From: Aplysia californica
Lineage: Eukaryota
NCBI RefSeq assembly: GCF_000002075.1
Contig: NW_004797339.1
Location: 779,634-843,633 of the forward strand
Direction: 5' to 3'
DNA length: 64,000 nucleotides
Shown: piece by piece, positions 9,236-9,589 of the stretch
Layout: the number at the start of each line of letters is the position of its first letter
Numbering within the stretch: the first letter of the stretch is position 1
The notes under the pieces: generated by a model
The model's database searches: none
What the model was told of the DNA's origin: nothing
What the model saw: only the letters and a program-made list of their open reading frames with translations
Position numbers and translations under genes: made by a program

Positions 9236-9589
9236 TTAATTTACAACATCATCAGTGTTTACGGTATCACTAGCATTTACCGCATCAATAGTGTTTACAT
9301 CATCATCATTGTTTACAACATCTACAGTATCATCTGCATCATTGGGGTCATCAACTTCTATATCGAGATCGTCCAGATCAATATCATCAAAGTGAACAGC
9401 CCTTTCCTCACCAACTCTTATTTCCACACTTAGTCTTACATCTGCTGCCAAAAACAGAAATGTAAGATATGCTGGGAGCCGTATTCGTGACACCCACGCA
9501 AGACGGAATAGAAAAACAAGAGCTTCACTCAGACTTTTTGAAAAATCAGAATACAGTGACCCAATACCAGGGACAGATGTCTCTTCCAT
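9236..9589 (-). CDS. Putative upstream-ORF protein, 117 aa (hydrophobic/amphipathic N-half, Asp-rich C-half)
   Basis: ATG in strong context (aggATGg); the Asp-rich tract uses mixed codons rather than a simple microsatellite; lies between the presumed promoter and the ankyrin-gene ATG. No homologue recognised. Confidence 0.55.
   Translation of the reverse strand: MEETSVPGIGSLYSDFSKSLSEALVFLFRLAWVSRIRLPAYLTFLFLAADVRLSVEIRVGEERAVHFDDIDLDDLDIEVDDPNDADDTVDVVNNDDDVNTIDAVNASDTVNTDDVVN

What the first reader, a model, noticed from the sequence alone, without database searches (positions are those of the whole stretch)
9236..9589. Protein-like 117-aa ORF upstream of the ankyrin gene: possible bicistronic transcript
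Seen: a strong-context ATG opens MEETSVPGIGSLYSDFSKSLSEALVFLFRLAWVSRIRLPAYLTFLFLAADVRLSVEIRV followed by a long Asp/Asn/Val-rich tract. It stops 216 nt before the main ATG (9019), on the same strand and downstream of the presumed promoter. Known: some animal mRNAs encode an independent protein in the leader (ASDURF/ASNSD1, the MIEF1 upstream protein). Inference: this may be an unannotated microprotein co-expressed with the ankyrin protein, possibly regulating it. I recognise no homologue.
Basis: partly seen in the sequence, partly recalled or inferred. Interest (0 to 1): 0.75.

Follow-up and report, generated by a model that had tools for sequence, protein, structure and literature searches.

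The report
SMIM10-like ORF upstream of FAM220
This small upstream reading frame in the sea hare is a real, conserved gene for a SMIM10-family microprotein that sits in front of the FAM220 gene just as its counterpart does in humans and mice, so this two-gene layout looks very old.

Summary
The 117-codon ATG ORF at 9236-9589 (-) is exactly as described. Residues 12-57 match Pfam DUF4560, the SMIM10 small-protein family (E 5.9e-5). A profile built from it and its 3 closest relatives finds 94 proteins, and 75 of 97 aligned members match DUF4560. The ORF 216 nt downstream is a FAM220/SIPAR-domain protein with ankyrin repeats, 100% identical to Aplysia californica LOC101861107. The HGNC 2026 paper states that human SMIM10L3 ('SAGSIN1') is nested in the 5' UTR of FAM220A, in human and mouse. 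This locus is therefore the mollusc counterpart of a known two-ORF gene.

Five of 13 contigs of the closest small-protein relatives have exactly the length and source of contigs of the top FAM220 relatives (0.24 expected). That points to linkage in other gastropods.

RNA evidence in Aplysia is thin: 35 reads in three runs, with no joints. The exact protein is absent from the 15-billion-protein collection.

Verdict: a new member of a known kind, of moderate interest.

The parts
9236..9589 (-). Coding sequence of the SMIM10-family (DUF4560) small protein: 117 codons plus TAA
   Evidence: Searches give the ORF. One search gives the Pfam DUF4560 match (E 5.9e-5). Searches give the relatives and the invariant residues.
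9419..9556 (-). Conserved core, residues 12-57, matched to the DUF4560 profile. It contains the near-invariant F26, A31, W32, P39, F46, D50 and E56
   Evidence: One search gives the matched stretch. Searches give the invariant and near-invariant columns. predicts one helix over residues 10-68, with 10-residue block mean pLDDT of 82-93 over residues 11-60.
9240..9322 (.). 18-nt tandem repeat (4.6 copies, 72% matches) that encodes most of the Asp/Asn/Val tail. It is a lineage-specific lengthening of the acidic tail
   Evidence: TRF. Relatives have shorter acidic tails and are 73-97 aa long.
9020..9235 (-). 216-nt spacer between the two ORFs. It has no AATAAA, ATTAAA, AGTAAA or TATAAA, it has 4 ATGs, and frame 0 is closed by many stops
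   Evidence: RNA reads lie on it in run X21 (depth 0.9) but barely in X22 (0.06) and not in X23.
7866..9019 (-). First coding exon of the FAM220/SIPAR-ankyrin gene (residues 1-385 of LOC101861107). It ends at the donor AG|GT (GT at 7865-7864)
   Evidence: One search gives FAM220 at E 9.9e-53. Searches give 100% identity to P0100. Searches give the exon end.
6325..6466 (-). Second coding exon, the start of the ankyrin repeats, in frame with exon 1
   Evidence: read by eye; tblastn, residues 385-433, 100% identity.
5708..5888 (-). Third coding exon (ankyrin repeats)
   Evidence: (residues 432-500 partly matched). The last ~48 residues of P0100 were not located in the window.
9590..9900 (-). Leader upstream of the small ORF. 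It has only one ATG (9648, followed at once by TAG), so the small ORF's ATG is the first usable start if transcription begins in this stretch
   Evidence: The transcription start was not determined: only one run has reads on 9600-9799 (depth 0.29).

Best explanation
The ORF at 9236-9589 (-) is the Aplysia californica gene for a SMIM10-family (Pfam DUF4560) small protein. The protein has a ~60-residue conserved helical core around an invariant Pro, followed by a disordered, strongly acidic tail that an 18-nt tandem repeat has lengthened here.

The ORF lies in the leader of the FAM220/SIPAR-ankyrin gene LOC101861107, 216 nt before that gene's ATG and on the same strand. Human and mouse SMIM10L3 ('SAGSIN1') lies the same way in the 5' UTR of FAM220A/Acpin1. 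The locus is therefore the mollusc counterpart of a known two-ORF gene.

Shown here:
- both homologies;
- the single copy in this genome;
- conservation of the peptide and its start;
- linkage in other gastropods, though only indirectly.

Inferred:
- Both ORFs ride on one mRNA in Aplysia.
- Scanning ribosomes translate the small ORF by default, because it has the first usable AUG in a strong context.
- The FAM220-ankyrin ORF, which lies behind 20 further AUGs, is reached by reinitiation, internal entry or another transcript form. Leaky scanning is unlikely.

The biochemical role of the small protein is unknown. My guess is a membrane-associated or oligomerising helix that acts together with the FAM220 protein.
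For: - Pfam: residues 12-57 match DUF4560 (E 5.9e-5), and the only other hit is far weaker (E 0.012). The downstream ORF matches FAM220 at E 9.9e-53.
- Close relatives: three proteins at 66-69% identity share the MEET start, the core LSFLFRLAW.SR.RLPAYL..FLA.D.RLS.EI and an acidic tail. 28 columns are invariant.
- Family: the profile search gives 94 proteins at E <= 1e-3 and 11 at E <= 1e-10. 75 of 97 aligned members match DUF4560, best E 2.1e-21. All 10 of 10 tested relatives have DUF4560 as their only hit, and 4 of those 10 score at or above the curated cut-off.
- Copy number: one copy in the 927-Mb genome. The other 2 of 3 matches have E of 5 and 8.
- Literature: a passage in PMC8872619 says DUF4560 is the conserved motif of SMIM10L2A. 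A passage in PMC12807706 says SMIM10L3 is a paralogue of SMIM10, SMIM10L1, SMIM10L2A and SMIM10L2B and is nested in the 5' UTR of FAM220A in human and mouse. Its source is Ueda et al. 2009, which I saw only as a title in the reference list.
- Linkage elsewhere: 5 of 13 contigs of the closest small-protein relatives have the same length and source as contigs of FAM220 hits ranked 2-5 and 13. The lengths are 2133, 2228, 2062, 2402 and 2752. The offset control expects 0.24, with a maximum of 2. Two of these contigs (2133 and 2062 nt) hold full 535- and 541-aa FAM220-ankyrin ORFs. Those ORFs are split by introns in Aplysia, so the contigs must be spliced transcripts, and only 276 and 214 nt are left over. 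Two more matches (3123 and 2374) fall in caenogastropods.
- Polymorphism: the 2 of 2 differences in the small ORF between a DNA run and the window are synonymous, and so are the 2 of 2 in the FAM220 exon.
- RNA: reads of three polyA runs lie in one direction over 8600-9399, which spans the FAM220 start, the spacer and the 3' half of the small ORF; in one run (X22) reads reach 9799. No joint removes the ORF.
- Spacer: no polyadenylation signal.
Against: - The window protein itself scores 23.3 bits, below Pfam's cut-off of 27.
- RNA support is thin. Only 8, 14 and 13 reads were laid on 5991 nt. The bin 9400-9599, which holds the ATG, has depth 0, 0.12 and 0. The spacer bin has 0.9, 0.06 and 0. 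Joints are reported only from 3 reads upward, so splicing is not excluded. In addition, 22 of the 35 reads fit only partly.
- The reads lie on the - direction, and the tool warns that in most stranded libraries the first mate reads the strand opposite to the RNA. If that holds for these runs, the reads are antisense and show no expression of the gene. I take them as sense only because they coincide with exons of the - strand gene.
- Linkage in other species rests on equal contig lengths. I did not see the contigs, so order and strand are unknown. One further match (P0266, also 2133) is probably chance, and over all 88 lengths about 1.15 matches are expected against 8 seen.
- Three of the five matched FAM220 ORFs stop at ...LQAIR, as an unspliced genomic contig would. 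Those three show adjacency, not a shared mRNA.
- Twenty AUGs lie between the two starts, which argues against efficient translation of the second ORF from the same mRNA.
- I did not compare the protein with a vertebrate SMIM10L3 sequence directly. None was named among the hits.
Confidence: 0.8

Rival explanations
1. The small ORF is a real SMIM10-family gene but a separate one. It would have its own promoter and transcript and merely lie next to FAM220, so the two are neighbours and not cistrons of one mRNA.
For: - Many arthropod relatives are annotated as stand-alone genes.
- The Aplysia reads do not bridge the two ORFs in any reported joint or piece, and the spacer has almost no depth in 2 of 3 runs.
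- Twenty intervening AUGs make a shared mRNA a poor template for the second ORF.
Against: - The 216-nt spacer has none of the four polyadenylation signals searched.
- Run X21 has depth 0.9 on the spacer.
- Two length-matched contigs of 2133 and 2062 nt have room only for both ORFs as one spliced transcript.
- The human and mouse counterpart is described as nested in the FAM220A 5' UTR.
Confidence: 0.12
2. The ORF is the first coding exon of the FAM220-ankyrin gene. It would be joined in frame to the main ORF by splicing or readthrough, giving a fusion protein.
For: The two ORFs are in the same frame.
Against: - Frame 0 of the spacer is closed by many stops.
- Relatives of the small protein end in their own stop after an acidic tail.
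- FAM220 relatives keep their own start, MSRG(I/V)(K/R)DLRDL.
- None of the 97 family members carries a FAM220 domain.
- No joint was seen, although the depth was low.
Confidence: 0.03
3. It is a chance ORF, or a purely cis-acting regulatory upstream ORF whose peptide does not matter.
For: The window holds 10 ATG ORFs of this size or larger, so length alone proves little. The tail is a low-complexity repeat.
Against: - Relatives at 66-69% identity share 28 invariant columns.
- The family has 94 members at E <= 1e-3, reaching arthropods.
- The small protein is about as conserved as the FAM220 partner in the matched pairs: 42-63% against 58-70% identity.
- Both polymorphisms in the ORF are synonymous.
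Confidence: 0.02

Closest known systems
SMIM10L3 ('SAGSIN1') nested in the 5' UTR of FAM220A/Acpin1, in human and mouse (passage in PMC12807706; Ueda et al. 2009 seen as a title only)
   Same: A small protein of the SMIM10 family is encoded upstream of a FAM220-family ORF, on the same strand and in its leader. Both homologies were tested here.
   Different: The host is a mollusc. The downstream protein carries C-terminal ankyrin repeats; from memory, the human protein lacks them. The small protein has a 56-residue acidic tail made by an 18-nt repeat. Translation of both ORFs, and tissue-specific use, were not tested here.
SMIM10, SMIM10L1, SMIM10L2A/B: the stand-alone human paralogues, with the DUF4560 motif (passages in PMC8872619 and PMC12807706)
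   Same: The same Pfam family and a similar small size.
   Different: HGNC lists them as separate gene entries, and the passage places only SMIM10L3 in the FAM220A leader. Aplysia has a single copy, and it is the one in the FAM220 leader.
Other proteins encoded in mRNA leaders, such as ASDURF/ASNSD1 and the MIEF1 upstream protein
   Same: An independent, conserved protein is encoded upstream of a larger main ORF.
   Different: The families are unrelated. Here the pairing itself seems shared between molluscs and mammals.

Membership tests
SMIM10 family / Pfam DUF4560 (PF15118) | Significant match to the family profile, as the best hit | tested here: met
   E 5.9e-5 over residues 12-57, covering profile positions 19-60 of 64. 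The next family scores E 0.012.
SMIM10 family / Pfam DUF4560 (PF15118) | Score at or above Pfam's curated cut-off of 27 bits (an operational threshold) | tested here: inconclusive
   The window protein scores 23.3 bits, below the cut-off. Its 10 tested relatives score 19.8-31.1 bits, and 4 of the 10 are at or above 27.
SMIM10 family / Pfam DUF4560 (PF15118) | A profile built from the protein and its closest relatives finds the family again | tested here: met
   94 proteins at E <= 1e-3. 75 of 97 aligned members match DUF4560 at E <= 0.01, best 2.1e-21, and no other family has more than 3 members.
SMIM10 family / Pfam DUF4560 (PF15118) | Small protein with the conserved core (F, AW, RLP, F, D, E columns) | tested here: met
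   117 aa. P39 is invariant, and F26, A31, W32, F46 and E56 are at least 90% conserved in 97 sequences. F26, A31, W32 and P39 are invariant in 41 sequences.
SMIM10 family / Pfam DUF4560 (PF15118) | Integral membrane segment, as the gene name implies | tested here: inconclusive
   The model is one long helix over residues 10-68. The best 19-residue hydropathy window scores only 1.28 and contains arginines. No membrane predictor was available.
SMIM10L3-FAM220A two-ORF gene | The downstream ORF belongs to the FAM220 family | tested here: met
   Pfam FAM220 at E 9.9e-53 and 180 bits. Relatives are named 'SIPAR domain-containing protein'.
SMIM10L3-FAM220A two-ORF gene | The small ORF lies upstream on the same strand, with no transcript end between the two ORFs | tested here: met
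   It lies 216 nt upstream on the same strand, and none of the four polyadenylation signals searched occurs in the spacer.
SMIM10L3-FAM220A two-ORF gene | Both ORFs lie on one mature mRNA | tested here: inconclusive
   In Aplysia, 35 reads in one direction cover both ORFs and the spacer, but depth is at most 1.8 and no bridging record is shown. In two relatives, contigs of 2133 and 2062 nt seem to hold both ORFs, judged by equal contig lengths only.
SMIM10L3-FAM220A two-ORF gene | Both proteins are made | not testable with these tools
   This needs ribosome profiling, mass spectrometry or tagged alleles.

The most novel reading that the evidence does not exclude
The SMIM10-family ORF in the FAM220 leader is the ancestral state of the whole SMIM10 family. 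On this reading it has been kept as a two-ORF message since before protostomes and deuterostomes split, which would make it one of the oldest conserved two-protein mRNAs in animals. It was kept because the two products work together or must be made in a fixed relation. The stand-alone vertebrate and arthropod copies would then be later escapes.
Probability: 0.4. Interest if true: 0.6.

Novelty: new member of a known kind. Interest (0 to 1): 0.45.

Why it matters
- It adds a missing gene. The exact protein is absent from the 15-billion-protein collection, while the downstream protein is present with an NCBI name. None of the 13 listed members of the closest relatives' clusters comes from NCBI or UniRef. 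The small protein is therefore likely overlooked in mollusc annotations generally.
- It extends the human and mouse SMIM10L3-FAM220A arrangement to gastropods. That arrangement was named only recently.
- Pairing of the same two families in molluscs and mammals argues for common descent of the layout and for selection on the linkage. It gives a concrete reason to test whether the small protein and FAM220/SIPAR act together.
- I found no statement of this deep conservation in the held library: 0 papers hold FAM220A with uORF, 2 papers hold SMIM10L3, and 1 holds FAM220A with SMIM10. Subscription papers and supplementary tables were not visible, so the point may be in print elsewhere.

Tried and rejected
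- The ESM Atlas look-up of residues 1-75 gave no usable hit.
- Two scans of metagenome contigs, with alignment A1 and with P0003, found no relative. I could therefore read no DNA of any relative, and dN/dS, ORF order and spacer length in other species stayed untested.
- The search of the own genome found no paralogue.
- Ueda et al. 2009 is not held. I know it only by its title and by what the HGNC paper says of it.
- I did not run fold search, because the model is a single long helix with pTM 0.30 and any matches would be meaningless.
- The DNA-like run X3 proved to be genomic: even depth of ~53-57 and one contig over 7307-11000. It says nothing about RNA.
- The 14-letter loose end at 10642 has no match in the window. 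I could not use it to settle the strand of the libraries.
- The careful tree did not finish, so one search is the quick tree only.
- Chance ORF, fusion by readthrough and a purely regulatory uORF were considered and rejected (see rivals).
- Rows dropped: from the 103 FAM220 rows I kept 66 contig lengths, leaving out records over 50 kb and rows without a length. From the 87 rows I kept 62, leaving out rows already counted and large NCBI records, among them one of 24161 nt left out by oversight. From I left out records over 50 kb.

Full report
**The observation.** The start context is AGGATGG. The spacer to the next long ORF (ATG at 9019) is 216 nt, and the two ORFs are in the same frame but separated by many stops. 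The last 56 residues are D 19, V 10 and N 7, with net charge -20. An 18-nt tandem repeat of 4.6 copies at 9240-9322 encodes most of that tail. ORF length alone means little: the window has 10 ATG ORFs of at least 117 aa, against 1.7 +/- 1.2 in 30 shuffles, and several of them lie in repeats.

**What the two ORFs are.** Pfam places residues 12-57 of the small protein in DUF4560 (E 5.9e-5, 23.3 bits, below the curated 27). It places the 385-aa downstream ORF in FAM220 (E 9.9e-53).
- The downstream ORF is 100% identical to the first 385 residues of a 540-aa protein that NCBI names uncharacterized protein LOC101861107 of Aplysia californica. That protein carries FAM220 plus ankyrin domains.
- Its exon ends at the donor AG|GT (GT at 7865-7864). 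Ankyrin exons follow in frame at 6325-6466 and 5708-5888. The last ~48 residues were not found in the window.

**Homologues of the small protein.** A word-indexed search with residues 1-75 gave 3 proteins among 14 candidates, at 66-69% identity. They share the MEET start, a core with 28 invariant columns and a short acidic tail.
- A profile of these four sequences, run against 1.84 billion representatives, gave 94 proteins at E <= 1e-3 and 11 at E <= 1e-10.
- Of 97 aligned members, 75 match DUF4560 at E <= 0.01 (best 2.1e-21), and no other family has more than 3 members.
- All 10 of 10 close or paired relatives have DUF4560 as their only hit, and 4 of the 10 score at or above the cut-off.
- Named members are from spiders, myriapods, crustaceans and insects, all as uncharacterised proteins. 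A few carry misleading names that may reflect the acidic tail, such as 'calsequestrin-2', 'trigger factor' and 'aspartic acid-rich protein'.
- The Aplysia genome holds one copy. The other two of three matches have E of 5 and 8.
- The exact 117-aa sequence is not in the 15-billion-protein collection.
- The predicted structure is one helix over residues 10-68, with block mean pLDDT of 82-93 over residues 11-60, and an unstructured tail. Hydropathy is modest: the best 19-residue window scores 1.28 and contains arginines. A true transmembrane segment is therefore not shown.

**The link to what is known.** A passage in PMC8872619 says that SMIM10L2A encodes a small protein with the conserved motif DUF4560. 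A passage in the HGNC 2026 paper (PMC12807706) says that SMIM10L3, first published as 'SAGSIN1', is a protein-coding gene nested in the 5' UTR of FAM220A. It also says that the gene was identified in mouse and human and that it is a paralogue of SMIM10, SMIM10L1, SMIM10L2A and SMIM10L2B. The source is Ueda et al. [quoted passage not shown] I saw it only as a reference-list title, because the paper is not held. Both cistrons of the Aplysia locus thus belong to the same two families as the mammalian pair, in the same order. Convergence on such a pairing is unlikely, so I read the locus as the orthologous arrangement.

**Is the pairing kept in other species?** I could not fetch any relative's DNA. 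The protein tools do print the length of the contig on which each protein was seen, so I compared those lengths.
These are 2133 (Logan), 2228 (ENA), 2062 (JGI), 2402 (ENA) and 2752 (Logan).
- Sliding the lengths by 1-60 gives 0.24 matches on average and at most 2.
- Among 75 further, more distant family members there were 3 matches (3123, 2374 and a second 2133). Over all 88 lengths there were 8 matches, against 1.15 expected. The second 2133 (P0266) is probably chance.
- On a quick tree, four paired FAM220 proteins group with Aplysia (support 100). One is sister to all other heterobranchs (100). The 3123 and 2374 partners fall among caenogastropods (100), with P0127 next to Nucella. The other candidate partner of the 2374 match, P0194, sits on a long branch outside gastropods.
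- The 2133- and 2062-nt contigs hold uninterrupted 535- and 541-aa FAM220-ankyrin ORFs, which in Aplysia are split by introns, and they leave only 276 and 214 nt beyond the two ORFs. If each pair is one contig, it is a spliced mRNA carrying both ORFs.
- The other three paired FAM220 ORFs stop at ...LQAIR, where an unspliced Aplysia exon also stops. They may be genomic and show only adjacency.
- In the matched pairs the small protein is about as conserved as FAM220: 42-63% identity against 58-70%.

**RNA in Aplysia.** One read-laying run on 5600-11590 used three polyA RNA runs of the same species label plus one run of unknown kind. The unknown run is genomic DNA. The RNA runs gave only 8, 14 and 13 reads.
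- All reads on 8600-9799 lie in the '-' direction. In all three runs they cover 8600-8999 (the FAM220 start) and 9200-9399 (the 3' half of the small ORF).
- The spacer bin 9000-9199 has depth 0.9, 0.06 and 0. The bin holding the ATG (9400-9599) has 0, 0.12 and 0. The bin 9600-9799 has 0.29 in one run.
- No joint, start or end reached the reporting threshold, and 22 of the 35 reads fit only partly.
- Reads on 10000-10800 lie in the '+' direction.
- The tool warns that in most stranded libraries the read is opposite to the RNA. I take the reads as sense because they coincide with exons of the - strand gene (part of one read lies on the ankyrin exon at 5600-5799) and because divergent transcription from about 9800-10000 is the simpler picture. 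This is inference. The reads therefore do not contradict a shared mRNA and show no removal of the ORF as an intron, but they do not prove a shared mRNA either.
- Differences between the DNA run and the window are synonymous in 2 of 2 cases in the small ORF and in 2 of 2 cases in the FAM220 exon.

**How it most likely works.** Between 9900 and 9589 there is one ATG, followed at once by a stop. If transcription starts there, the small ORF has the first usable AUG, in a strong context, and scanning ribosomes translate it by default (established scanning model). Sixteen out-of-frame AUGs inside the ORF and four in the spacer make leaky scanning to 9019 implausible. The FAM220-ankyrin ORF would then need one of three routes: reinitiation, internal entry, or a transcript that lacks the upstream ORF. 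The title of Ueda et al. speaks of alternative translation giving two proteins in different tissues, which fits such a switch. None of this was tested here.

**Verdict.** The thing is a new member of a known kind: the mollusc counterpart of SMIM10L3-FAM220A, unannotated in Aplysia. The new element is the apparent age of the pairing. In the held library I found no paper holding FAM220A with uORF (0 papers), only 2 holding SMIM10L3, and only the HGNC paper holding FAM220A with SMIM10. Subscription journals and supplements were not visible. One note on this window, about the +1 frame after the stop, was checked and holds.

Noticed in passing
window 9142-9240 (-): After the small ORF's TAA, the +1 frame continues with the same Asp/Asn-rich style (INSDDNNTSNADEH...) and ends in ...RTRKRKV before a stop at about 9142. 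This suggests a frameshift in a once longer tail, or repeat slippage. An independent DNA run shows no indel here.
   Followed up: partly
window 7862-7867 and 7400-7600 (-): The donor AG|GTGA of the FAM220 exon puts a stop codon right after the exon, so an unspliced RNA would encode a 385-aa protein without ankyrin repeats. Three relatives' ORFs (P0101, P0104, P0112) end at the same ...LQAIR. One RNA run has depth 0.94 on 7400-7599, and an AATAAA lies at 7417. A short isoform ending in intron 1 is possible.
   Followed up: partly
window 10000-10800 (+): RNA reads of three runs lie here in the opposite direction to those on the gene. This suggests a divergent transcript from a shared promoter region near 9800-10000. 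Three reads of X23 have a 14-letter loose end before 10642 that matches nothing in the window.
   Followed up: partly
window 9764, 10800, 10880: A DNA run of the same species label differs from the window by an 11-nt insertion behind 9764 (in the presumed leader), a 5-nt insertion behind 10800 and a 7-nt deletion at 10880.
   Followed up: no
window 952-1464: Long ORFs on both strands here come from a (CA)n/(TG)n microsatellite (THTHTH... and VCVCVC... peptides), not from genes.
   Followed up: no
proteins P0231, P0232, P0253: Insect members of the family carry the names 'aspartic acid-rich protein', 'calsequestrin-2' and 'trigger factor'. These names may come from the acidic tail rather than from real kinship.
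   Followed up: no
proteins P0009, P0011, P0015: Some family members contain two DUF4560-like cores in tandem within one predicted protein.
   Followed up: no
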